Shown here: positions 13,335 to 28,083 of the stretch, piece by piece
How the letters are laid out: each line of letters opens with the position of its first letter
Numbering within the stretch: the first letter of the stretch is position 1
NCBI GenBank assembly: GCA_001949185.1
Contig: BDGG01000001.1
Span: 7,824,149-7,888,148, forward strand
Reading direction: 5' to 3'
Length of the DNA: 64,000 bases
Source of the DNA: Ramazzottius varieornatus
Lineage: Eukaryota; Animalia; Tardigrada
Program-made: the position numbers and the translations under genes
The notes under the pieces: generated by a model
Seen by the model: the letters and a program-made list of their open reading frames with translations, nothing else
The model's database searches: none
What the model was told of the DNA's origin: nothing

Positions 13335-14023
13335 ACGGATTATTCTCTGCACACTTGACTCAAAATTTCAAATTTTCACTTCTCAGCTGATCTCTATCTG
13401 CACAGTGCTTCACGTTGCGAGATACCGTTTCGCGTACGGGCTTCTTGATACCTATTAGTGTCGGGGATATCAGAAGACAGATACCGGCCAGAGAGAAAAC
13501 CATGAATTCCAACTTAGTCAGGAGGCAAAGTTTGCCTACAAACCTACCCCGCAAAACTCGCGCATTTCCGGTCCCGTTTCTGAGACTTGCGAAAAATCCA
13601 ATTTTGCCTCACTCACGACTAATTTCCGTTGATCAAGCAAACTCAAATTTTAAATCAACCGTTTGCGACATAAACAGCTCATCGTGAGGAGGACTGTTGT
13701 GCCGAAAATTCTGGTGAATTGATCAATGGTACGGTTCGGACCAACTTCCGTGATGGTTATCTCTCTTTGCATGACACTTTCGGCGAAAGCAGACAGTTGT
13801 GACGACAATTACTCACTGCTTCTGCGCACAAGATGGATAAACGCTGTCGAAAACAGATAAACAATGTGTTATGTGATGCTGGCTACGTCATAGGCTCCCT
13901 TTCCTTACCCAGGCCCAACAAAGGACTTTGCCGTGTTTTGACTTACAGTAATTTATTGCCGAGAGCGGATATAATACTCTGTATCCGCAACAGAGTCGCA
14001 AAAATAGCTAGTCATTCTTGCAG

Positions 14024-14030
14024 TATAAAA
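14024..14030 (+). promoter_or_regulatory. Probable TATA box of defensin-like gene copy 1
   Basis: TATAAAA about 130 bp upstream of the ATG, conserved in copy 2 (TTTTATA at 26364-26370). Confidence 0.55.
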
Positions 14031-14156
14031 GCTGTGACACCTTTCGATTGTTTAGATACTGTCGCACTTTACTTGGTCGACACATGCAGTTTGCCTTTCC
14101 CCATCGGTTGCCTACTTACTGGCTTCTTCGTTTCCCGGTTACTGCAAACGCTCACC

Positions 14157-14443
14157 ATGAAATACGCTGTTCTTTTCGTCCTCGTTGTGGTGTGCAGCTT
14201 CCTCGGTAAGTAGACATCACGGCTTCCCATTGTTCCGCAGAACATTTCCAAGAGAAACACGTCGCCCTAAAACTGCTCGTCGATATTGCAGTTATCGATC
14301 AAGCCTTGGCAGGCTACGACGGATGTCCCGGTTGTCCAATGAGTAACGGAGGAAACTGTAACCAGTGCTGCATAGATAAAGGATCCAAAGGTGGCGGTTC
14401 CTGCTCTGGCTTTATGTGGACGTCCTGCTGGTGTACTGATTAA
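14157..14443 (+). CDS. Secreted 8-Cys CS-alpha-beta defensin-like peptide, copy 1 (66 aa; exons 14157-14205 and 14292-14443)
   Basis: Spliced product MKYAVLFVLVVVCSFLVIDQALA-GYDGCPGCPMSNGGNCNQCCIDKGSKGGGSCSGFMWTSCWCTD*. It has a signal peptide with a phase-1 intron inside it and the CxxxC / GxC / CxC defensin pattern. Confidence 0.85.
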
Positions 14444-17400
14444 ATGAAAGCGTGAATATCATTTAGGCGTCAATCTCTTCATTAAGCGTGAACATCATTT
14501 CATTGTCCATTAATTGATTGTCTTATGTTACTTGGTTCCACTGTTGGTTGAGACCAAACGACCCGGTTTTCGGTAAACAATGCCATATTCGACCCGTTCT
14601 AAGTAGTCGGCATGCATGAAGTACCAGGCGCGTCCCATAGCCTAATTGAAAAATATTCGAACTTTGGACCTGACGTCACGACTCGAGTCATGTCAGATAG
14701 CGAAATGTTGACGCGCAAACTTTCGAATTAAAGGTGAGACTCCGCTGGCGGACATCCGCTGCTGCCATCGGCGGCACCGAAAAACTTAACGGTGGGTCTT
14801 CGATGGCCCAAGTTAAATTTGTCCGTTGAGTGAAGAAGTTTGATGAAGGTGCTTGTCACGCTCTTCTGTGAGATGCGGACTAAGTTAAGACTTAGTCACG
14901 CACTACCTTACAAGTGATGGGAGGAGGCGCGCACATTCACCCTAGGCTTATTAACCAATCAGAACTCGGGCGATTTCTGGTGAAGCACAGCCTTGTGGCC
15001 AAGTTTGCTAAATACTATTCAGCACTTGAATGACTGTACGTTGACCACTATCAAATGAATCCACTCTTTCTGGTATGGCAAAGCCAGGTTCACATTTCGA
15101 ACCAGTGGACTGGAGAGTCCTGGTGCCAGCCCAGAAAAATACGTTTCGCATGACAGCGTCGCCCTGCCCGGTTAGGCGTATAGAGATTGTAAAAAAAGGA
15201 TTGCCCCATGACAGCTATTTTTCCTGTACCGCGGACGTTTCAGGAAAAAATCCCCACTACGTGGCATTGCGCATGGCTAAGATAGTCGTATGTTCCGTCT
15301 CCGCAGCACATTATGTTTATGAGACTAGCTAGTGGTTCTGACCACTGGGAAGGTCGAGCAAAGGAGGCAAAAGATTATGGGCCACACATTTCTACTGCGT
15401 AACGTTTCAATTGCGAGTAAAAAGTTTCTGTGACCCGGATCAAGTTACGCATTTGTTTTCAGTACAGAGTTTGCGATATGTGAAAACTCGAAGAATGTGA
15501 TCGTCCATTGAAATCTCGACAGACTTGAAAGATTATTGGACTGATTATTGGAATTATTTAGCCACTTTTCGGCATGTTAGATGTTAGACCTTTAACCACA
15601 ATTCGAATGAAATATGCCAGCTAGCCAGGGGAGAGACTGATTAGACTAAGTGATATAATTTATTCAGAATAAGATGAGGAAAGGTCAGGGCACAGGGAGA
15701 TACGGTATTGGATATGGGGCTAGGTTCGGACAAGGAAGTCTAAGGAGAGAGAAGAGTTCGAAGGGAGGCTAAACTCAGAATGACTTGAACGATGTTCGTA
15801 AAGTTAAGATGCGAACAAGGAAGTACATTCGACCGATGGTCAAACAGTCTAGCGGAGAGGAAAGGGTCGAGCATGGAAACTTCCACAGCTTACTCTGTAC
15901 AGTATCGAATAACAAACGATTAATATTGTTAGGGAACTAATACAGAATAGATTTCCGTGGGCTGTTATAAAATTATGTCACTCTGGTTTCGTCCCGATAA
16001 GGTAGCAATGTACTCGTAGTACCGCGCCTCCGTTGCTCGTTGCTTGACGTGCTGAATCAAACTTCATTTCGAAGTTCGCACAGACCCAACTTCGGTTTGC
16101 CACATGGACACCGTGAGCCAGGATCACCCGAAAGGTATCATAAAAATATGCGTACAAAAGCAGGGAAAAGTTTATAGTCAGACCGCAGTAACGGGCTGCT
16201 GGCTCAAAAGATGGTTACGCAGAATACTACACGACCCTTCAGGCACAGATACCACAACTCGATTCAACAGATCTTTCAGTAAAGAGGAACTCCTACGAAA
16301 ATCTATTAGTATAAAGTCTTGATATGGTCCCTCGTGTTTCGACGCAGAGACCGATTATTTACACTGTGTAGACTTGCATCCAGTACTTCTCTTTCAGGTC
16401 TCGAACACAAGGCTCGAAGATTCGTTTCTTTACATCGTCGACTTCCGCGGCTTGCTGTTCTCTGCCTTGGAGCTTTACTGTTGGTTCGACAATCCAGGCC
16501 AGTCACCCTTTCTCGGTCGGTAATGGTGATAAGAACAACGTGCGCCAATTTAGTGGGGTGATGATTTTTCCCATTTCTTCGGTCGTATTATTGATAAATT
16601 CAAACCACAACACTTAAAAAAACGAGGGTATCGAAATATTGATTGTGACCAGCGACAGAAGTTTTCGAACTAAGGGTTCGACTTTGCACCTGTAAGCGAT
16701 GCGTTAAGCACGAGTACTTGAAGGTGACGAAATGTGACGGTTTTCTTTTTAAGCTTTCGAACATATTGTAGGAGGAACTCACTGCGCTAAGGGGGTGTTT
16801 AGCGACTCTCGTCATTTAGGTCGCCCATGGGAAGGCAGGTACCACACCAAACTCAACACAAGTAACGGTGCTTGCAGTGGGTGAGGCGAAGAAGACAAGA
16901 CGACGAGGGAAGTGAAGAGAACGATGAACAGCTCAAGCAAAACTTGTTGTAGTTTCGTTGTTTGGCGGGTCTTCTGATCACCCGCTGCATACCATGTCAA
17001 GAATTTCAGAAATCAAAGAAGTATTCAGGAGCAACATTGTATTCTGCGACCCCATACTCAGTCATAATCGTCTGCCTCGAAAGCTTCTTCTACGACGCTA
17101 AGAAGAAATTCGTGCATTTCTTTTTGTAAAGAGTGCAAAACGGACTTTCGAAAAAACCGGTTTTTGCCAAAATTTCGTTCAGAAAAAGTATTTTGTATTT
17201 GCAACGTTCAACGTTCACCAATACTGCAGCAGCTATTAACTGTACCGACAGCGCTATGACATCATCGCCATGGTATTACGGTAACTTGAACATCATTGTG
17301 TCCGTCAGTTTGGACGAAAAGAACGTACCGGAAGTGGGACGCAGCAGAACTGGCTTCTAATGGAAGTTGTTTACAATCGACAAAATTTTTCGAATTCTAA

Positions 17401-17864: not shown

Positions 17865-19921
17865 TTATGGCTTGTTACGAGCTTTCATATTTTGAATTGG
17901 CGAAGGCACTTCGTTAAGAGAAACCGTACAGCCAGTAGCTTCCGTCAGCCGTTCCTCTGGACAATGTATCCATCCCTCTCCTTCAACTGGACTTTTTAGC
18001 GGGTACGTTGCTGCAACCTACAGAACGAAAGTAGCCACAGCGTACTTGCTGAGTTGAACACGATCTGAAGAACCTCGCGGCTGTCAGAAAATTCACCTGT
18101 AGCTTTCCTGGCTCCATTTCGTAGAGCATTTCTCTCTTATGCAGAATTCTAAGACAATCAAGCTCGTTGGCGAACCATCGACAGACTCGTCTTCGCTTCA
18201 TCTGAACTTACGTTCGGTTGTTCATAAAGAACACGCTATCCACTGTTGGTGGAGCGCCGCTGATTTCGTTGAGGCTTCGAACCTCATCACTCGGCTTGAC
18301 GGGTAATTTCTCATCCGGATAGAAGGCTTGAAAAGTTGAACCTACAACCTTAGTACTCCAGATCAACTGAGACAGGATGAACATGACATTACGGACCCAT
18401 GTACAAAACATCTGGCTCACCAGAAACTGCGATGAAGGTGTGGTTGTTCAGCTGGAACACACCATCTATCGGCGACATCAACCCTGGGAAGCCGCTTTTT
18501 ATCCGTCGGAACTCGATCGTCGATAACCCAGGCTTTAGACCATTGCGATATTTGTGATACCGGTCTCCCTGAGAACAAAGGACAAAAAATTATCTTTCGA
18601 CCTAAACAAATTAGTGAAACAACGTACTTGGAAGAGGTAGTCAGAGCCTTTGATACTGACAGCAGCCAAGAGTCCTCGGAGAGCTGGGTCCAATTCAAAT
18701 GGCTGGTCGTCTACTGGGTTTCCGTCGGTGTCGAAGCGGTAAACGTTCTGGCCCTTGATCGCCAGAATGGCATCGCCGATCGTCAGGATCTTATCAAACG
18801 GCATCTACAGTAAGGACGCATCGCTCAGTGTTTTGAATAATTTTTCAAACCTTTGTCATTTTGAGGGTTAACTGACGTCATCGCAGACTTTGGGCCGGGG
18901 AATAGGCGAACACTTCAGCAGAGCGATCTGGCTTCCGTGGTCTGAAACTGCTCGCTGAGCCAGCATTCTTTTCTGCGAATGACCTTTCCCGCTTCGTAGG
19001 AGAAATGAAGGGACGCTATAGGGGATTGCAGCAAAAGACCTCGCCAATCCCGGAGCATATTCTGAAACAAGTCCTCCACCAGCGCCACCGCCCCCGCCAC
19101 CGAGGGACGATAACAGGAACGGAAGAAGCAAATTCGACCCGTGACCACCTTCTTCGCTTCCACCACCAAACGAAGACAAAGCTGCAACCACGATACAGTT
19201 GCATAATTAGACGTATAGAGATACAAACAAAACAAACTTGTAGAAGTACACGCATGCGTCTCAAGTCCTAGCCAGAACACGGTGGAGAAAAAAGTGTGCG
19301 TCAAGACTTTTATCTCGCTTAAGACAAAGGTAGGGCGCGTGCGCGTACGTGCTTTGGGTGTGGGTTTACCGAGAAGCGGGAGAAGGGCTTGGAGGACCGA
19401 GTTGATCGATGCCGGCGAGGGGATGGGTGGTTGGGTGGCGCCAAGTGGCGGAGGTGGAACGGGAACCTGTCGTTCGAAAGGAGCAGATGGCATTGGTGGG
19501 GCTTGACCCTCGAAGAAGAGCTGGTCGGCATACGACCCAGAGTACGGAGCGATCATAGTGGTGGTTGATGCAGGAGGGCTCCAATCCAGAGAGGGGAGCT
19601 CTAAAGCTTTGACAGCTCGTTTATGTCGACCAAGTACTACAGATAAGAGCTGGTCCAGTATCAATGTAAATGGTGTGAGAACGGCAACAATATGGCTACT
19701 ATGGTCATAAGTTCACCTGCTCTTCGTTCCATTTTACTCTGATGCAACGGGTCAAAAACACGTACGTCCTAAAAATAACCGAGCAAATCGAACAAGATGA
19801 TCCAAATACAAAATGACGAAATCCGGGGGAAAAAGATAGTCTTGATTACCTTGGTGTCAGAGCAGACAAGCATTCCCAGAATTTCGACCGCAAGCAGTAT
19901 CCCGTCATTCTTTGGCCACAT
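17865..19921 (-). CDS. Secreted low-complexity + hemopexin-domain protein A (HPX-A), ~9 coding exons
   Basis: Weak signal peptide (MWPKNDGILLAVEILGMLVCSDT), RHKR site, Pro-rich then Gly-rich region, then CSPIPRPKVCDD. Four blades follow (PFDKILTI..AIKGQNVYRF; LLAAVSI..YLFQGDRYHKY..GFPGL; IDGVFQL; VDSVFFM..LHKREMLYEM) and the C-terminus GWIHC...GC. The 5' exons are less certain. Confidence 0.8.
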
Positions 19922-21011
19922 TGCTACTATAGGTACTGCGTCAGAAAACCATTTGGAAAACTCTGAGATCTTTTACAAAGTGCCCGCGTCGCATCAAGAT
20001 CTTCAGATGATATCAGTTTGGATACGCTGCTGATCGTCGAGTTTTCGCGTCAGTCTTCCGGATGACCAGCTTGACAAGGGATCGATGTTAAACTTAGGAA
20101 ACCACCCGGGCCTTAGGTATCGTTGATTAGCTGATGCATTACGATTAGCGCCAGGATTTTGCGTCAATGTCCGATTTGAGCTCGCACGTACCACGAGCCA
20201 CTTCCGGGTTTCCCCGTCGCGGTGAGTCAACATCACGCTCAGAACCTTAGTTGATAAAGTTGTTTTACTGGAGGACTGAATCTCATCGTTGACGCATCAG
20301 CTAGCTTAGATTAGAATTAGTACGATCAAGCCAGTAGACCGGCTCCGCAATCTTCAATACAATTCTTTTATCCGAGTTCATACCGACAGCTTCGTCATCT
20401 TACCTTGTTCGTATGAAGAAAACCAGGATCCTAAATTCAGGTGTGCTTGATTGCATACATAGGATCTTCCCTGGTTTCCAGTCTGACATTCAAATCACGA
20501 CTCTTCGCATACCATCTGGATCCGATCCTGTTCTACTTTATTCAGTATTTGGTTCTTGCCAAATTTAATTGTTAGTGTATTTCAGAAGTCGAATTTGATT
20601 CTTAGTGTATTCAAGAAGTCGATTCGCGGAGACATAGGGACCGAGATGAACACGGACGCCAGCTGCGATCAGTGCGGTGAACGAGGCAGCGATGAGGATA
20701 ATCCTGGATCAAGAGTCAAACCGAGGTGTCAAACAGCTGATCTGGTCACTGCCACTACCGTCCAGCATTTAGGATCCTGGCACATGCTGCTAATCTCCTT
20801 ACCTCGTGCGGTCAGCAGAGACGTAAATCCGCGACGCCTTCATGCCGTAATCGCAGGGAAGTGGTGTGCGACGTAGCCACGCATAAACGGGCAACACGCT
20901 ACTATTTCTTGCTCCTCAGGTTTGACATTACTCTGAACTTCCGCATTGCCAAACGGACAACCAGTGTTTAATTTGCAGGTGCCTCCTCGATAGACAATAC
21001 CGTCCACGCAA

Positions 21012-22800
21012 ATGAGGTATCACGGAGCGCTTCTTCTGTTGGCGATATGTTCGGCCATTGGATTTTCGGAGTCCACCAACATCCGCCAAGACCTGGCTCG
21101 TAAGCAAATAATGAGGTGTTCATTGACTGCTGGCTTAACTGCAGATGTCTTTCGTTCATAGCGCGCTTGGAGCGGGAACAGCGTTCCATCATGTCTTCTG
21201 AGCTCTTGGCTATGAACATGATGCTGCCGTTGCTGACTTCCGCAGCGCTGAATGCAAATAATGCGGATAAACAGGCCAACCTCAACCAACGACAAATTCA
21301 GAATGAAGGAGCAGGTCAGCCAGCAGTTCCTGGCGAGCCTACCGCCGCTGCCTCGCCTTTAACCCAGTTGTTACCCTTCCTACGTAAGCGCCATCATCTC
21401 AACAAAATGCATGTTGTGTAATGGCAACTATACTTGTGTTGCAGTTGGTCCTTCTGGAGGTTTCGCCAGAAAAATTCTGGGTGGCGGTAGCGGTGGTAGT
21501 TTCGAGGTAGGCAAGACTGGTCGCCTCCTGACTAACGTCCTCCTGGCCAATGCTATTTCCAATGCGCTCGCACAAACACTTGCTACGACGACAGCGACGA
21601 CGACCAGTCAACCTCCTTCGGCAAACTTAGTGGCTGGTCCGGGACGAAGGTCGCCAAAGAAGGCCGAACTTCGCATGACCAACGTGGCCATTAATAGAGT
21701 CACCAGTGAGACGGACCCGAAAGTGGTCAGAAGTCCCGCGACCGACACTGATGACAGATGTTCGTCATACGTGCCGCGAAGTCAAGTCTGCAATGACGTA
21801 AGTTTGGCTACCATTCTGTTGAGCGTCCCTCACACGTGGTCACTTTTTGGTCACTTTTCAGTTACCTGTGGATAAGATTCTGGCTTTGAAAAACGCCGTG
21901 GTGGTATTCAAAGGGCGGAACGTATACCGGGTTCGTCCCAGTGGGGAACCATTCGACCTGGAACCGACGCTGATTGACGAGAAGGTCGAACCGTTAACTG
22001 CCGCCGCGGCAATTGGAGATGCCCAATACGTCTTCCAGGTACGTTTCTCTTGCACCATGCACATTTTCTCGAACGTTCCGGAAGAATCGTAAACAGTTGT
22101 AAACTGACGTTTCAGGGTGACAAATATACAAAGTATGATTCGAATTTCCGTCAAGCGCTCGGTGTCTTCCCGAAACCTGTGTCTGAAGGGTTCCCTGGTG
22201 TTTTGACGCCAGTCGACGGGGTCTTCAAGCTAAACAACCACACTTACGTGTTCGTCTCTGGTAAAATGAGCTTTTATGGTTCTGTACATCTATTATGTAC
22301 TGCGTAACATGATATCTCTTCCAGGTACCAAGTTTGTGTATTTCCAACCGGACGCGAACCCGCAAGTTGACCCGCGTTACAGCCCACAGTACTTGGATAA
22401 TATTCCCGGTGCACCAGCTACTATTGATAGTGTCTTTACACTGAAGAATCGGAAGTAAGTTTGGCTTAGGTACTGGTAACTTCCTGCTTCAGCCTTAATC
22501 GTATTGATTCCGTAGGTTTCTGCACAAGGAGGGCTTGATCTACGAACTATCACCGGACGAAATGAAGGTAAGAAGTGGTGGGTAACGCCGGGGACAGTTC
22601 GCTCTTTTTCTATTAATAGCATTGCCTTTTCACCGAATGTATGCACGTCTGTGTTTATGAAGGTGACGAGTGAGATTCCGGTGTTAAGTACCACAAAGGA
22701 AGGCTGGCTGAAATGCCCGGACGTATTTCCAGCGCGCTGCAATCATCGTCAACTTGCCATCACAACAACGATGGCTTCTGAACCTTTCGCTCTGCCCTGA
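21012..22800 (+). CDS. Secreted low-complexity + hemopexin-domain protein B (HPX-B), 8 coding exons
   Basis: Signal peptide MRYHGALLLLAICSAIGFSES, REQR site, Ala/Gly/Thr-rich region, then CSSYVPRSQVCND. Blades PVDKILAL..VFKGRNVYRV / LTAAAAI..YVFQGDKYTKYD..EGFPGV / VDGVFKL / IDSVFTL..FLHKEGLIYEL, then GWLKC..C. All introns are GT-AG and in phase. Confidence 0.85.
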
Positions 22801-23197
22801 ATATCCGCATTGGTCGAGATGATAATTATAGGGCCCACCTTATGCACAATTTCTCACATCACGTTCTCTTAACGCTGAAATACGTATCTGTAATCGCTTC
22901 GGACATCAGCTGCATAGACAGCTACGTTCATGGTTTGTTTTGCCAAAACTTTTTGTAGACAAAGCATGGGTAAATCACTTCTTCGAACTTGAAAGAGTCA
23001 CGTACTGTGGCGAAAGCAGTTTAGTTAAAGGAACTGCCGCTGCAAGTACTCGACGGAGCATCAGCGCACAGACTGGCCCACTTGACACGGCTTCAGCAAG
23101 CAGCCGATTCTGTGTGACCGAATAAATATCATCCACATCTCATATCGATATTAGTAAACATCCTGAAAACTCGCCACACGTGAGAGGCGCGAGTAGA

Positions 23198-24919
23198 ATG
23201 ATGTTCACCTTCCCCATCTTGATTGCACTGAGCAGCTTTACCTTAGCATGGAGTGTAGCTCAAGCGTTCGAAGTGCCGTCACATTCTTCAATGCGACCTC
23301 CTACTCCTCCCGCTCCCCCTCCAAAGTCCCCACCCTCTTTCCAGGAAGCTAAGAGTAAGTAGGTAGGTATTTTTTGCGAATTGCGCACTTACTCCTTCTC
23401 GACCATTATCTCGCTCGATCCATGGCGACTGCGTCAACACGGTTAATTCGCAGAGATTTTGGCTGAGGCCATAACTACGCTCAAGCCGGCGCAGCTTCGT
23501 GACGGGCTTTTGCGTTCAGCGGAAGGCGGTTTTATGGGATCGGCTGAAGGTATCGGGGGACTCTTGGCTCAGTTACTAAAACTGGAAGCTCTAATGGCTG
23601 CCCTGTCACCGCCCGCCGCTTCACCGCCTGCATCAGGCAGTGGCGCCGCTCCCCCGGCACCACCACCAGCCGCTGGAACTCCACCAGCCGGTGGGACCCC
23701 ACCAGCGGCCGGCTCTCCACCAGCGGGCGCTCCTCCGCCTGCGGGCGGCTCTCCTCCGGATTTGTCGAAGCTGTTATCCCGTAAGCTAGCCTTACTTTGT
23801 CGGTTCGATGCTATGCAAAGGCAGACATGTGTACTTTCCAGTGATGGCGTTGTCGGGCGGCTTTGGAAGTGGCGACGACGCGGATGAAATGGCACTTGGA
23901 TATGACGACAGAAATACGGTCAACTGCACTTCCGACGGGATAACGCGCGGCATTTGCGATTCCCATGTATATTGAGAGTGATGGACGCTCTCTTGGCCAT
24001 ACAGCGCGCAGACTGAGCCGTACATATTTTTTGCTCTTTTTGCAGAACAGCATCAACAACTTGATAACCTTCCCGGATCACGTCTTGGCCGTGGGTGCAG
24101 AAGATGTCTTCAAGGTTGCGGCGGACGGTACGCCAATCGATGCCTTTGGAGACCCGAAGTTCTACGTCTTCCAGAAGCTCAACGGCACGCCCACGGCCAG
24201 TCTACAGATCGAACACCTCTTCTACGTGTTTTTCGTAAGTGACTTTAAAGGTCTCGTTGTGTACCTGTGTTTTATTGCGGTATCAGTGGCTTTCGTGTTT
24301 AGGGAACGGAGGTAGCCTTACTGAACAATCAGACCAGCGCCACTTTCCACCAACGATTGCCTGTCAGAGATCTGTTCTTCAAAGTCGATCGGCCTGTAAT
24401 CGGAGCCTTCCGATTCAACGACCATACTCTGACGATATTTTACGGTAAGTGCGCATATTTAATTTTCATAAATCAAAGGTGGTGAAAATCGTGACCGTGT
24501 CTTGCAGAAACCCACTTCGTTTTCTATCAACCACTGATGAATCCGCCCATTGATCCTCGCTTCAGTCCACAGCCAAATTCCGTCATTCCAAACGGTCCCG
24601 ACAAGATTGATGGAGCACTGCAGATAAATGGCACCAAGTATGGGCTCGAAATATTGGTTCCTACAGATATTGAACACGAGATGTGACGTTAACGTTATTT
24701 CATTGTAGTTTCCTGTATCGACAAGGATGGTTGTATGAAATTGCCAAGAACGAGATGGTGGTAAGTCCATGTTGAAGCATCCCTACTGTAACAGGTCCAG
24801 ACAGGAGCCTCCAAAAAAGCTGTGTTTTCTTTGCTATGCAGGTGGTGGCTAAACGTCCTCTCCGCAAATCCAGAGGGGATTCTGGATGGATAAAATGCGG
24901 GCAACAGTCCTGTAACTAG
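23198..24919 (+). CDS. Secreted Pro/Ala/Gly-rich + hemopexin-domain protein C (HPX-C), 8 coding exons
   Basis: Signal peptide MMFTFPILIALSSFTLAWSVAQA, PPA(A/G)G repeats, then CTSDGITRGICD and four divergent blades (SINNLITF; TASLQI..YVFFG; VIGAFRFNDHT; IDGALQI..FLYRQGWLYEI), ending GWIKCGQQSCN*. Intron positions match HPX-A and HPX-B. Confidence 0.82.
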
Positions 24920-25822: not shown

Positions 25823-26505
25823 AAAAACCGGGCCGTTGGGTCTTGACGGACAGTAGAACCACGTCAGGTAAGACAATCAATTAATGGGCAATGAAATGAT
25901 GTTCACGCTTAATGAAGAGATTGACGCCTAAATGATATTCACGCTTTCATTTAATCAGTACACCAGCAGGACGTCCACATAAAGCCAGAGCAGGAACCGC
26001 CACCTTTGGATCCTTTATCTATGCAGCACTGGTTACAGTTTCCTCCGTTACCCATTGGACAACCGGGACATCCGTCGTAGCCTGCCAAGGCTTGATCGAT
26101 AACTGCAATACCGACGAGCAATTTTAGGGCGACGTGTTTCTCTTGGAAATGTTCTGCGGAACAATGAGAAGCCGTGATGTCTACTTACCGAGGAAGCTGC
26201 ACACCACAACGAGGACGAAAAGAACAGCGTATTTCATGGTGAGCGTTTGCAGTAACCGGGAAACGAAGAAGCCAGTAAGTAGGCAACCGATGGGGAAAGG
26301 CAAACTGCATGTGCCAACCAAGTAAAGTGCGACAGTATCTAAACAATCGAAAGGTGTCACGGCTTTTATACTGCAAGAATAACTAGCTATCTATCCGTCT
26401 TTTGCGCAGAAACAGTGAGTAATTGTCGTCACAACTGTCTGCTTTCGCCGAAAGTGTCATGCAAAGAGAGATAACCATCACGGAAGTTGGTCCGAACCGT
26501 ACCAT
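25823..26505 (-). repeat. Arm 2 of the inverted duplication (runs into an assembly gap)
   Basis: Reverse complement of 13726-14570 with one internal deletion. Confidence 0.92.
25951..26237 (-). CDS. Secreted 8-Cys defensin-like peptide, copy 2
   Basis: Same 2-exon structure as copy 1. One coding change (AGT>GGT, giving CPMGNGG instead of CPMSNGG) and 3 intronic substitutions. Confidence 0.85.
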
Positions 26506-26555
26506 NNNNNNNNNNNNNNNNNNNNNNNNNNNNNNNNNNNNNNNNNNNNNNNNNN
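26506..26555. other. Assembly gap (50 N)
   Basis: Run of N. Confidence 1.
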
Positions 26556-27633: not shown

Positions 27634-28083
27634 NNNNNNNNNNNNNNNNNNNNNNNNNNNNNNNNNNNNNNNNNNNNNNNNNNNNNNNNNNNNNNNNNNN
27701 NNNNNNNNNNNNNNNNNNNNNNNNNNNNNNNNNNNNNNNNNNNNNNNNNNNNNNNNNNNNNNNNNNNNNNNNNNNNNNNNNNNNNNNNNNNNNNNNNNNN
27801 NNNNNNNNNNNNNNNNNNNNNNNNNNNNNNNNNNNNNNNNNNNNNNNNNNNNNNNNNNNNNNNNNNNNNNNNNNNNNNNNNNNNNNNNNNNNNNNNNNNN
27901 NNNNNNNNNNNNNNNNNNNNNNNNNNNNNNNNNNNNNNNNNNNNNNNNNNNNNNNNNNNNNNNNNNNNNNNNNNNNNNNNNNNNNNNNNNNNNNNNNNNN
28001 NNNNNNNNNNNNNNNNNNNNNNNNNNNNNNNNNNNNNNNNNNNNNNNNNNNNNNNNNNNNNNNNNNNNNNNNNNNNNNNNNNN
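27634..28083. other. Assembly gap (450 N)
   Basis: Run of N. Confidence 1.

What the first reader, a model, noticed from the sequence alone, without database searches (positions are those of the whole stretch)
17865..24919. Tandem family of three secreted 'hemopexin-only' proteins: MMP-type propellers with no protease domain, behind low-complexity arms
Seen in sequence: after splicing, three paralogs each read signal peptide - Pro/Ala/Gly/Thr low-complexity region - four hemopexin-like blades. They end in the MMP-type GW(I/L)xC motif and share intron positions across the propeller. None has an M10 catalytic domain (no HExxHxxGxxH) or a PRCG cysteine switch. Established: in MMPs the hemopexin domain mediates matrix binding, dimerisation and TIMP binding. 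Inference: this is a lineage-specific family that repurposes the domain as a structural or binding module (cuticle, egg shell or adhesive) or as an MMP decoy. The ORF track does not show these genes because they are split into short exons.
Basis: partly seen in the sequence, partly recalled or inferred. Interest (0 to 1): 0.85.

Follow-up and report, generated by a model that had tools for sequence, protein, structure and literature searches.

The report
Tardigrade secreted hemopexin-only protein cluster
Three neighbouring genes of the tardigrade Ramazzottius varieornatus encode proteins made of a floppy low-complexity arm and a four-bladed hemopexin-type propeller with no protease part; the family is real and so far seen only in tardigrades, but it is a new member of a known domain class and its function is unknown.

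Summary
The window is Ramazzottius varieornatus DNA. At 17865-24919 lie three intron-split paralogs: gene 1 on the minus strand, genes 2 and 3 on the plus strand. They correspond to RvY_02814, RvY_02815 and RvY_02816. All introns are GT-AG, 59-167 nt, with the same positions and phases across the propeller.

Each gene encodes a P/A/G/S/L-rich arm of about 170-220 aa and a 207-211 aa hemopexin-like domain. The domain lies between two Cys pairs, a family-specific four-Cys signature that includes the GW(I/L)xC motif.

- **Fold:** Pfam PF00045 passes its cut-off for genes 1 and 2. Gene 3 is recognised only by a family profile and by its predicted fold. AlphaFold2 models of gene 3's protein and of a gene-2 ortholog give confident propellers whose best PDB matches are vitronectin and MMP hemopexin domains.
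- **No protease:** there is no M10 domain, zinc motif or cysteine switch in the genes or the window.
- **Signal peptide:** genes 2 and 3 have clear signal peptides. Gene 1 has none in frame in this assembly.
- **Family:** a fourth member lies on another contig. All named relatives are tardigrade proteins, all annotated as uncharacterised.

Function is inferred: an extracellular binding module on a flexible tether. RNA evidence could not be obtained. The scan holds another, unchecked note of a hemopexin-only protein elsewhere in this genome (s1-795458).

The parts
17865..19556 (-). Gene 1 (RvY_02814), coding region from the annotated Met. Exons: 19556-19349, 19181-18877 (arm, ends at the first Cys pair), 18804-18628, 18568-18421, 18341-18212, 18148-18097, 18017-17865 (propeller, second Cys pair, tail, stop). 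390 aa.
   Evidence: GT-AG introns, phases 1,0,0,1,2,0. (P0001 identical over the first four exons). (PF00045). The database model uses a different acceptor for exon 5 and reads into the intron after blade 3. My last two exons align with P0002, P0004 and P0006.
19557..19735 (-). Unresolved 5' end of gene 1. The reading frame stays open upstream of the annotated Met and contains a hydrophobic stretch but no ATG. An ATG followed by a short hydrophobic peptide lies in another frame and hits a stop.
   Evidence: This is an assembly error, a real frameshift or a missed exon; it cannot be decided without reads.
21012..22800 (+). Gene 2 (RvY_02815). Exons: 21012-21099 (signal peptide), 21162-21383 and 21445-21797 (arm, first Cys pair), 21862-22038, 22116-22260, 22325-22454, 22516-22567, 22663-22800 (propeller, second Cys pair, tail). 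434 aa.
   Evidence: (372 aa identical to P0003, which carries an extra 65-aa N-terminal extension and stops after blade 3). (PF00045, E 1.9e-10). (hydrophobic core; propeller 60% identical to Paramacrobiotus XP_055346006).
23198..24919 (+). Gene 3 (RvY_02816). Exons: 23198-23354 (signal peptide), 23454-23780 and 23842-23966 (arm, first Cys pair), 24046-24234, 24303-24444, 24508-24637, 24709-24760, 24842-24919 (propeller, second Cys pair). 399 aa.
   Evidence: (identical to P0011). (no Pfam hit). (exons match the family HMM in collinear order, best E 7.8e-10). (predicted propeller; best PDB matches are MMP-2, MMP-13 and MMP-14 hemopexin domains).
23663..23754 (+). 18-nt (six-residue, Pro/Ala/Gly-rich) tandem repeat of about 4 copies inside the arm of gene 3.
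19736..21011 (.). Divergent intergenic region between gene 1 and gene 2. It contains no protease-coding exon. It holds a 30-nt tandem duplication at 20562-20622.

Best explanation
This is a tandem cluster of three paralogous genes of the tardigrade Ramazzottius varieornatus. They belong to a small family seen so far only in tardigrades, with at least four members in this genome.

Shown or predicted: each protein has a 170-220 aa arm predicted to be disordered and rich in Pro, Ala, Gly, Ser and Leu. The arm carries a short conserved Leu-rich motif. It is followed by a single four-bladed hemopexin-like beta-propeller of about 210 aa. The propeller sits between a Cys pair before blade 1 and a Cys pair after blade 4. 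There is no catalytic domain of any kind. Genes 2 and 3 start with a signal peptide.

Inferred: the inner Cys of each pair forms the classical blade-1 to blade-4 disulfide, and the outer two form a second clasp. The proteins act outside the cell as non-enzymatic binding or adaptor proteins. The propeller would dock onto a matrix, cuticle or body-fluid ligand, while the flexible arm tethers, spaces or embeds it. This is the way vitronectin and PRG4 use the same domain.

The family most likely arose from an ancestral protease-linked hemopexin exon set, because two intron positions and phases are shared with an MMP gene of the same genome. It then duplicated in place.
For: - **Organism and gene identity:**
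- **Exon models:** uniform GT-AG introns and shared phases. Gene 3 is identical to an independent database model.
- **Blade 4 and C-terminus:** confirmed by alignment to complete orthologs.
- **Sequence homology to hemopexin repeats:** Pfam PF00045. A phmmer search of 1.84 billion representatives found only tardigrade proteins, unnamed short contigs and one springtail MMP-14 hemopexin domain at E 1.6e-4. A family-only profile hits vitronectin at 7.6e-10, hemopexin at 3.4e-8 and MMP-14 at 4.8e-6.
- **Predicted fold:** pLDDT is 70-95 over the propeller and below 50 over the arm. Foldseek's top PDB hits are vitronectin and MMP hemopexin domains, E about 1e-9, TM 0.6-0.73. Atlas structure neighbours are arthropod MMPs.
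- **No protease:**
- **Signal-peptide cores for genes 2 and 3 and for both Paramacrobiotus proteins:**
- **Four-Cys signature in all complete members:**
- **Fourth member:** contig C2, orthologous to Hypsibius BV898_10887.
- **Shared introns with the C13 MMP gene:**
- **Family clade separate from MMPs:** 100/100 support.
Against:
- The function is inferred from architecture only, and no ligand is known.
- Gene 1 lacks an in-frame signal peptide in this assembly.
- Gene 3 is very divergent (27-33% identity, no Pfam hit, a long branch) and has lost most of the blade-start Asp residues, so it may work differently or be decaying.
- The structure models rest on alignments of only 6-7 sequences, one of which is an MMP hemopexin domain.
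- The disulfide pattern is not tested.
Confidence: 0.55

Rival explanations
1. Protease regulators or decoys. The free propellers occupy the substrate or partner sites used by the hemopexin domains of tardigrade MMPs and of astacin-hemopexin or cathepsin-hemopexin fusion proteases, and so tune extracellular proteolysis.
For: The propeller is homologous to MMP hemopexin domains. At least seven M10 loci exist in the genome. Tardigrade-specific astacin+hemopexin orthogroups are listed in a supplement of PMC5531438. Hemopexin repeats and metallopeptidases are reported as expanded in three tardigrades.
Against: Identity to MMP propellers is only about 11-22%, and the family forms a separate clade, so exosite mimicry is not indicated. 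No TIMP match was found in the genome (inconclusive). The conserved long arms are not explained by this model.
Confidence: 0.15
2. Carriers of a small ligand (heme, metal ion, polyamine or lipid-like molecule) in the body fluid, as with serum hemopexin or the plant PA2/LS-24 albumins. The ligand would be held at the propeller channel or face.
For: The family profile hits serum hemopexin at E 3.4e-8 and, weakly, plant hemopexin-fold albumins and lectins. The same proteins appear among the fold matches.
Against: Serum hemopexin needs two propellers and a His-bearing linker, and these proteins have one propeller. No conserved His pair is evident in the alignments. The blade-2 channel Asp is replaced throughout the family, and gene 3 keeps only one of four.
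Confidence: 0.1
3. Immune or defence recognition proteins that are co-regulated with the flanking defensin-like genes.
For: The cluster is bracketed by 592-nt inverted repeats, 95% identical, that carry defensin-like ORFs (first-reader note s1-790302). Some hemopexin-fold plant proteins are lectins.
Against: Adjacency is the only evidence. No lectin-type motif or induction data exist. The fourth family member lies on another contig, away from this setting.
Confidence: 0.1
4. One or more copies, especially gene 1 or gene 3, are decaying duplicates without function.
For: The start of gene 1 is out of frame with its likely signal peptide. Gene 3 is a long branch with no Pfam hit.
Against: All three have fully open frames across 7-8 exons with intact splice sites. 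All conserved Cys are kept. The gene 3 model gives a confident propeller. Gene 2 has a 60%-identical ortholog, and gene 1 has relatives in other tardigrades.
Confidence: 0.1

Closest known systems
Hemopexin-like C-terminal domains of matrix metalloproteinases (e.g. MMP-2, MMP-14, MMP-13; PDB 1rtg, 3c7x, 1pex)
   Same: Four-bladed propeller of about 200 aa, with Cys before blade 1 and after blade 4. Among the best fold matches. A sequence hit to a springtail MMP-14. Two intron positions and phases are shared with an R. varieornatus MMP gene.
   Different: No pro-domain, cysteine switch or zinc catalytic domain. An extra Cys pair. 11-22% identity. A separate clade. A long disordered arm in place of the protease and hinge.
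Vitronectin and PRG4 (lubricin)
   Same: Secreted, non-enzymatic proteins with a disordered or low-complexity region followed by a hemopexin-like propeller. Vitronectin is the best sequence-profile hit (7.6e-10) and a top fold hit.
   Different: No somatomedin-B domain (only PF00045 was found). No RGD or heparin-binding regions were identified. These are vertebrate families with no orthology shown here.
Serum hemopexin
   Same: A protein built only of hemopexin repeats. Second-best profile hit (3.4e-8).
   Different: Hemopexin has two propellers joined by a heme-binding linker, whereas these proteins have one propeller and an N-terminal arm.
Single-domain hemopexin-fold proteins of plants (PA2, LS-24, CP4)
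   Same: A stand-alone four-bladed hemopexin fold without an enzyme domain. They appear among the fold matches.
   Different: Only marginal sequence similarity (E 0.04-0.5). They are seed proteins without a low-complexity arm and without the four-Cys clasp.
Other hemopexin-bearing genes of the same tardigrade genome (astacin- and cathepsin-hemopexin fusions; a Thr/Pro-rich region plus hemopexin ORF on contig C17)
   Same: The same domain is reused in many architectures in this genome.
   Different: Most of those carry a protease domain and score as canonical PF00045 repeats. The family described here is more divergent, and its window copies were not listed by the genome-wide PF00045 scan.

Membership tests
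Hemopexin-like repeat superfamily (Pfam PF00045) | Sequence match to the hemopexin repeat model above the curated cut-off | tested here: met
   Gene 1 (P0001): 21.8 bits against a cut-off of 21.3. Gene 2 (P0003): 41 bits, E 1.9e-10. A gene-2 exon alone: 25.4 bits. Gene 3 (P0011) has no Pfam hit but matches the family HMM exon by exon.
Hemopexin-like repeat superfamily (Pfam PF00045) | Four-bladed beta-propeller fold | tested here: met
   This rests on predicted models only. P0004 (gene-2 ortholog) and P0011 (gene 3) have pLDDT 70-95 over about 200 aa. The best PDB matches are vitronectin and MMP hemopexin domains at E about 1e-9, TM 0.6-0.73 by target.
Hemopexin-like repeat superfamily (Pfam PF00045) | Cys before blade 1 and Cys after blade 4 that close the ring by a disulfide | tested here: met
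   Both Cys are present and align with the terminal Cys of an MMP-14 domain. The bond itself is not testable with these tools.
Matrix metalloproteinases (M10A matrixins) | Zinc-binding catalytic domain with HExxHxxGxxH | tested here: not met
   No such motif in six frames of the window. No Peptidase_M10 in the family proteins. The genome scan places the nearest M10 about 519 kb away.
Matrix metalloproteinases (M10A matrixins) | Pro-domain with a PRCG cysteine switch | tested here: not met
   PRCG occurs only in the two flanking inverted-repeat arms, not in these genes. No PG_binding_1 hit.
Vitronectin / PRG4 | N-terminal somatomedin-B domain(s) | tested here: not met
   A Pfam scan of P0002, P0003, P0004 and P0006 returns only PF00045 or nothing.
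Vitronectin / PRG4 | Disordered linker followed by a C-terminal hemopexin-like domain in a secreted protein | tested here: met
   The arms have pLDDT below 50 and 44-59% P+A+G+S+T. Signal-peptide cores are present for genes 2 and 3. This shows resemblance of layout only, not orthology.
Serum hemopexin | Two tandem propellers with a heme-binding His pair at the linker | tested here: not met
   One propeller per protein.

The most novel reading that the evidence does not exclude
The family is a tardigrade-specific extracellular scaffold. A doubly disulfide-clasped hemopexin propeller on an elastic Pro/Ala/Gly arm would form part of the cuticle, egg shell or body-cavity matrix. It could contribute to the mechanical or desiccation resilience of these animals, making it a structural use of the hemopexin fold not described in other phyla.
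Probability: 0.15. Interest if true: 0.65.

Novelty: new member of a known kind. Interest (0 to 1): 0.4.

Why it matters
The work gives names and correct gene structures to three 'hypothetical' tardigrade genes; two of the public models lose the fourth blade. It defines a small family, seen so far only in tardigrades, with a diagnostic four-Cys signature. It also adds a protease-free branch to the already noted expansion and reshuffling of hemopexin repeats in tardigrades. If the proteins turn out to be cuticle, egg-shell or body-fluid components, they would be candidates for tardigrade-specific matrix biology. R. varieornatus can now be edited by DIPA-CRISPR (PMC11175437, listed), so this is testable. 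On present evidence it is a solid annotation result, not a surprise.

Tried and rejected
- **Synteny:** Those four peptides contain intron read-through, so they come from genomic contigs and are no evidence of expression.
- I redid it with coordinates only.
- **Joined models:** Exons were joined from coordinates only inside scripts, to count frames, lengths, composition and identities and to test identity with database proteins. Searches and folds used exon references or the database proteins P0001-P0011.
- **Possible fourth copy at about 1009 (minus strand):** it was suggested by a GW-I-x-C match, but no blade-like sequence lies around it and the family HMM does not hit there.
- **Homolog searches:** The search for homologous proteins with the P0001 propeller found only itself. 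With the family alignment it was swamped by low-complexity words and returned three proteins, which usefully included RvY_02816.
- **Gene 1 start:** alignment of the Paramacrobiotus N-terminus to the three frames upstream of gene 1 gave only weak scores, so the true start could not be fixed. A 49-nt mini-intron that would restore the frame was considered and not adopted, because it is shorter than every other intron in the cluster.
- **Literature:** no paper mentions the three locus tags or BV898_10887. Tardigrade plus hemopexin gives only a domain-count remark. The supplements of PMC9145152, PMC10939073 and PMC5531438 do not list these genes.
- **TIMP:** the genome scan found nothing, but the tool itself warns that this does not show absence.
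Full report
**Where we are.** The window is part of contig C1 (7,824,149-7,888,148) of a 55.8-Mb, 200-contig eukaryotic assembly. A search with an open frame from the region returned 'hypothetical protein RvY_02814 [Ramazzottius varieornatus]' at 100% identity. The organism is therefore this tardigrade. Later searches identified the other two genes as RvY_02815 and RvY_02816.

**Gene structures.** I read the three frames and the DNA and fixed exon borders by coordinates.
- Gene 1 (minus strand): 7 exons from the annotated Met, 19556 to 17865, 390 aa.
- Gene 2 (plus strand): 8 exons, 21012 to 22800, 434 aa.
- Gene 3 (plus strand): 8 exons, 23198 to 24919, 399 aa.

Every intron is GT-AG and 59-167 nt long, and there are no internal stops. 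The intron phases are the same in all three genes: 1 inside the arm, 0 before the first propeller exon, then 0, 1, 2 and 0 within the propeller.

The gene 3 model is identical to the database protein P0011, which is an independent prediction. The database models of genes 1 and 2 agree with mine over 279 and 372 residues, but both run into the intron after blade 3 and so lose blade 4. RvY_02814 also uses a different acceptor for exon 5, and RvY_02815 has a 65-aa N-terminal extension ahead of the signal peptide. The last two exons in my models align residue for residue with the complete proteins of Paramacrobiotus metropolitanus (XP_055346006, XP_055346008) and Hypsibius exemplaris (BV898_10887).

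Joins were made only inside scripts, from coordinates, to check frames, lengths, composition and identities and to test identity with database proteins. All searches and folds used exon references or database proteins.

**Is it a hemopexin propeller?** Four lines of evidence say yes.
- *Pfam.* PF00045 passes its curated cut-off on a single exon of gene 2 (25.4 bits), on P0001 (21.8 bits), on P0003 (41 bits, E 1.9e-10), and on both Paramacrobiotus proteins. Gene 3 and the Hypsibius protein have no Pfam hit. However, five exons of gene 3 match a family HMM in collinear order, with a best exon E of 7.8e-10.
- *Exhaustive search.* A phmmer search of 1.84 billion representative proteins with P0001 found only ten proteins: tardigrade proteins, four short unnamed contigs, and the hemopexin domain of a springtail MMP-14 at E 1.6e-4.
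- *Family-only profile.* Built without any MMP sequence, it hits PDB sequences of vitronectin (7.6e-10), serum hemopexin (3.4e-8), MMP-14 (4.8e-6) and a series of other MMPs. It also hits the hemopexin exons of R. varieornatus' own MMP genes.
- *Predicted structure.* AlphaFold2 models of P0004 and P0011 have pLDDT 70-95 over the C-terminal 200 residues, with four groups of three to four strands, and pLDDT below 50 over the N-terminal arm. The best PDB matches are the hemopexin-like domains of vitronectin, MMP-2, MMP-14, MMP-9 and MMP-13 (E about 1e-9, TM by target 0.6-0.73, about 200 aligned columns). The ESM Atlas's own model of P0004 has arthropod MMPs as its nearest structural neighbours.

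The alignments used for folding were shallow (6-7 rows) and included one MMP domain. That is a caveat on model quality, not on the homology.

**No protease.**
- No HExxHxxGxxH occurs in any of the six frames of the 64 kb.
- PRCG occurs only in the two flanking inverted-repeat arms, outside these genes.
- Pfam finds no Peptidase_M10 or PG_binding_1 in any family protein.
- The genome scan for Peptidase_M10 places the nearest hit at C1:7,305,304, about 519 kb away.
- Genes 1 and 2 diverge from a common 1.3-kb intergenic region, and gene 3 starts 400 bp after gene 2. There is therefore no room for an upstream catalytic exon nearby.

**Features of the family.**
- *Four-Cys signature.* The propeller plus clasps measures 207-211 aa from the first to the fourth conserved Cys. 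All complete members have a Cys pair 7-9 residues apart just before blade 1. They have a second pair, 4-10 residues apart, starting at the GW(I/L)xC motif after blade 4. The inner Cys of each pair align with the classical ring-closing Cys of MMP domains. I infer that the outer two form a second clasp; this is not tested.
- *Channel Asp.* The Asp that starts each blade in MMP domains is kept at three of four blades in genes 1 and 2. It is lost in blade 2 throughout the family. Gene 3 keeps it in only one blade (read).
- *Arms.* They are 171, 221 and 203 aa long and contain 44-59% P+A+G+S+T, with much Leu. They share a short Leu-rich motif near the exon junction. Gene 3 has an 18-nt tandem repeat of about four copies.
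- *Signal peptides.* Genes 2 and 3 and both Paramacrobiotus proteins begin with a hydrophobic core typical of signal peptides. Gene 1 does not when read from the annotated Met. Its frame is open upstream and contains a hydrophobic stretch but no ATG, while an ATG followed by a short hydrophobic peptide sits in a different frame. This could be a real frameshift, an assembly error or a missed exon.

**Family size and spread.**
- Propeller identities are 42% (gene 1 vs gene 2), 27% (gene 1 vs gene 3) and 33% (gene 2 vs gene 3). Gene 2 is 60% identical to Paramacrobiotus XP_055346006, its likely ortholog (83/93 support).
- A fourth member lies on contig C2, at about 7,023,600-7,025,500 on the minus strand. 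It is the ortholog of Hypsibius BV898_10887 and has a long C-terminal extension.
- In a small tree, the six family propellers separate from three MMP hemopexin domains with 100/100 support. The internal order of the family is otherwise unresolved, and gene 3 is a long branch.
- The two Paramacrobiotus genes carry neighbouring locus numbers and lie on a contig of the same length.

**Origin.** In the R. varieornatus MMP gene on contig C13, one intron falls in phase 0 just before the G-D-K-Y strand. The next falls in phase 1 within the Gly codon that follows the next inner strand. These are the same places and phases as the introns after exons 4 and 5 of the cluster genes. The MMP gene on C5 shows the same pattern. 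This fits descent from a protease-linked hemopexin exon set. It does not prove that origin, and I did not examine intron positions in vitronectin or hemopexin genes.

**Function.** Nothing here measures function. The layout is a signal peptide, a disordered arm and a clasped propeller with no enzyme domain. It is closest in kind to vitronectin and PRG4, where the domain is a binding module of secreted adhesive or lubricating proteins. I therefore rank an extracellular binding or adaptor role first. The rivals are protease decoys, small-ligand carriers, immune recognition and decaying copies, with the evidence listed in their own sections. No TIMP match was found in the genome (inconclusive).

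**Known or new.**
- The three genes are in public databases only as hypothetical or uncharacterised proteins.
- No paper in the library names them.
- The only tardigrade-hemopexin statement found is a domain-count remark that hemopexin-like repeats and metallopeptidases are expanded in three tardigrades (10.1101/122309).
- A supplement of PMC5531438 lists a tardigrade orthogroup that combines hemopexin repeats with an astacin domain.
- Other first-reader notes of this scan report astacin- and cathepsin-hemopexin fusions and another protease-free hemopexin protein elsewhere in this genome. I checked only that a Thr/Pro-rich region plus hemopexin ORF exists on C17.

Stand-alone hemopexin-fold proteins are known from vertebrates and plants. 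This is therefore a new, lineage-restricted member of a known kind, with a distinctive four-Cys clasp, and not a new kind of system.

**What could not be done.** Synteny in other tardigrades is also missing.

Noticed in passing
window 13979-14570 and 25824-26415 (also 13726-13839 and 26392-26505): Inverted repeats of 592 nt (95% identity) and 114 nt (97%) bracket the hemopexin cluster and carry Cys-rich defensin-like ORFs. The right arm runs into an N gap at 26506-26555, so part of the symmetry may be an assembly matter.
   Followed up: partly
G000:C2 about 7,023,600-7,025,500, minus strand (locus L010:2085-4017): A fourth member of the family, orthologous to Hypsibius exemplaris BV898_10887. 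It has the same four-Cys propeller, no intron between blades 2 and 3, and a long C-terminal extension ending in a conserved helix-like segment.
   Followed up: partly
window 17865-19556 and 21012-22800: The public models RvY_02814 and RvY_02815 are truncated after blade 3 by read-through into an intron. RvY_02814 also uses a different acceptor that drops five residues. RvY_02815 has a 65-aa N-terminal extension from an upstream ORF (20556-20876) that hides the signal peptide.
   Followed up: yes
window 19557-19735, minus strand: The likely signal-peptide region of gene 1 is split between two reading frames. The frame of the gene is open but has no ATG. An ATG plus a short hydrophobic peptide in another frame ends in a stop.
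   Followed up: partly
window 20562-20622: A 30-nt tandem duplication (two copies, 87% identity) in the divergent intergenic region between genes 1 and 2.
   Followed up: no
L007:121-1098 (G000:C17:565,920-566,897): A single 326-codon open frame with a Thr/Pro-rich low-complexity stretch followed by hemopexin repeats (PF00045, E 1.4e-14) and no M10 hit nearby. This is another arm-plus-propeller layout in the same genome. The upstream exons were not examined.
   Followed up: partly
whole genome G000: At least seven loci carry Peptidase_M10 matches (C1 x2, C4, C5 x3, C13), but the exon-wise scan found no TIMP (PF00965) match. The tool warns that this does not show absence.
   Followed up: no
window 26506-26555 and 27634-28083: Two runs of N (50 and 450 bases), that is, scaffold gaps just right of the cluster.
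   Followed up: no
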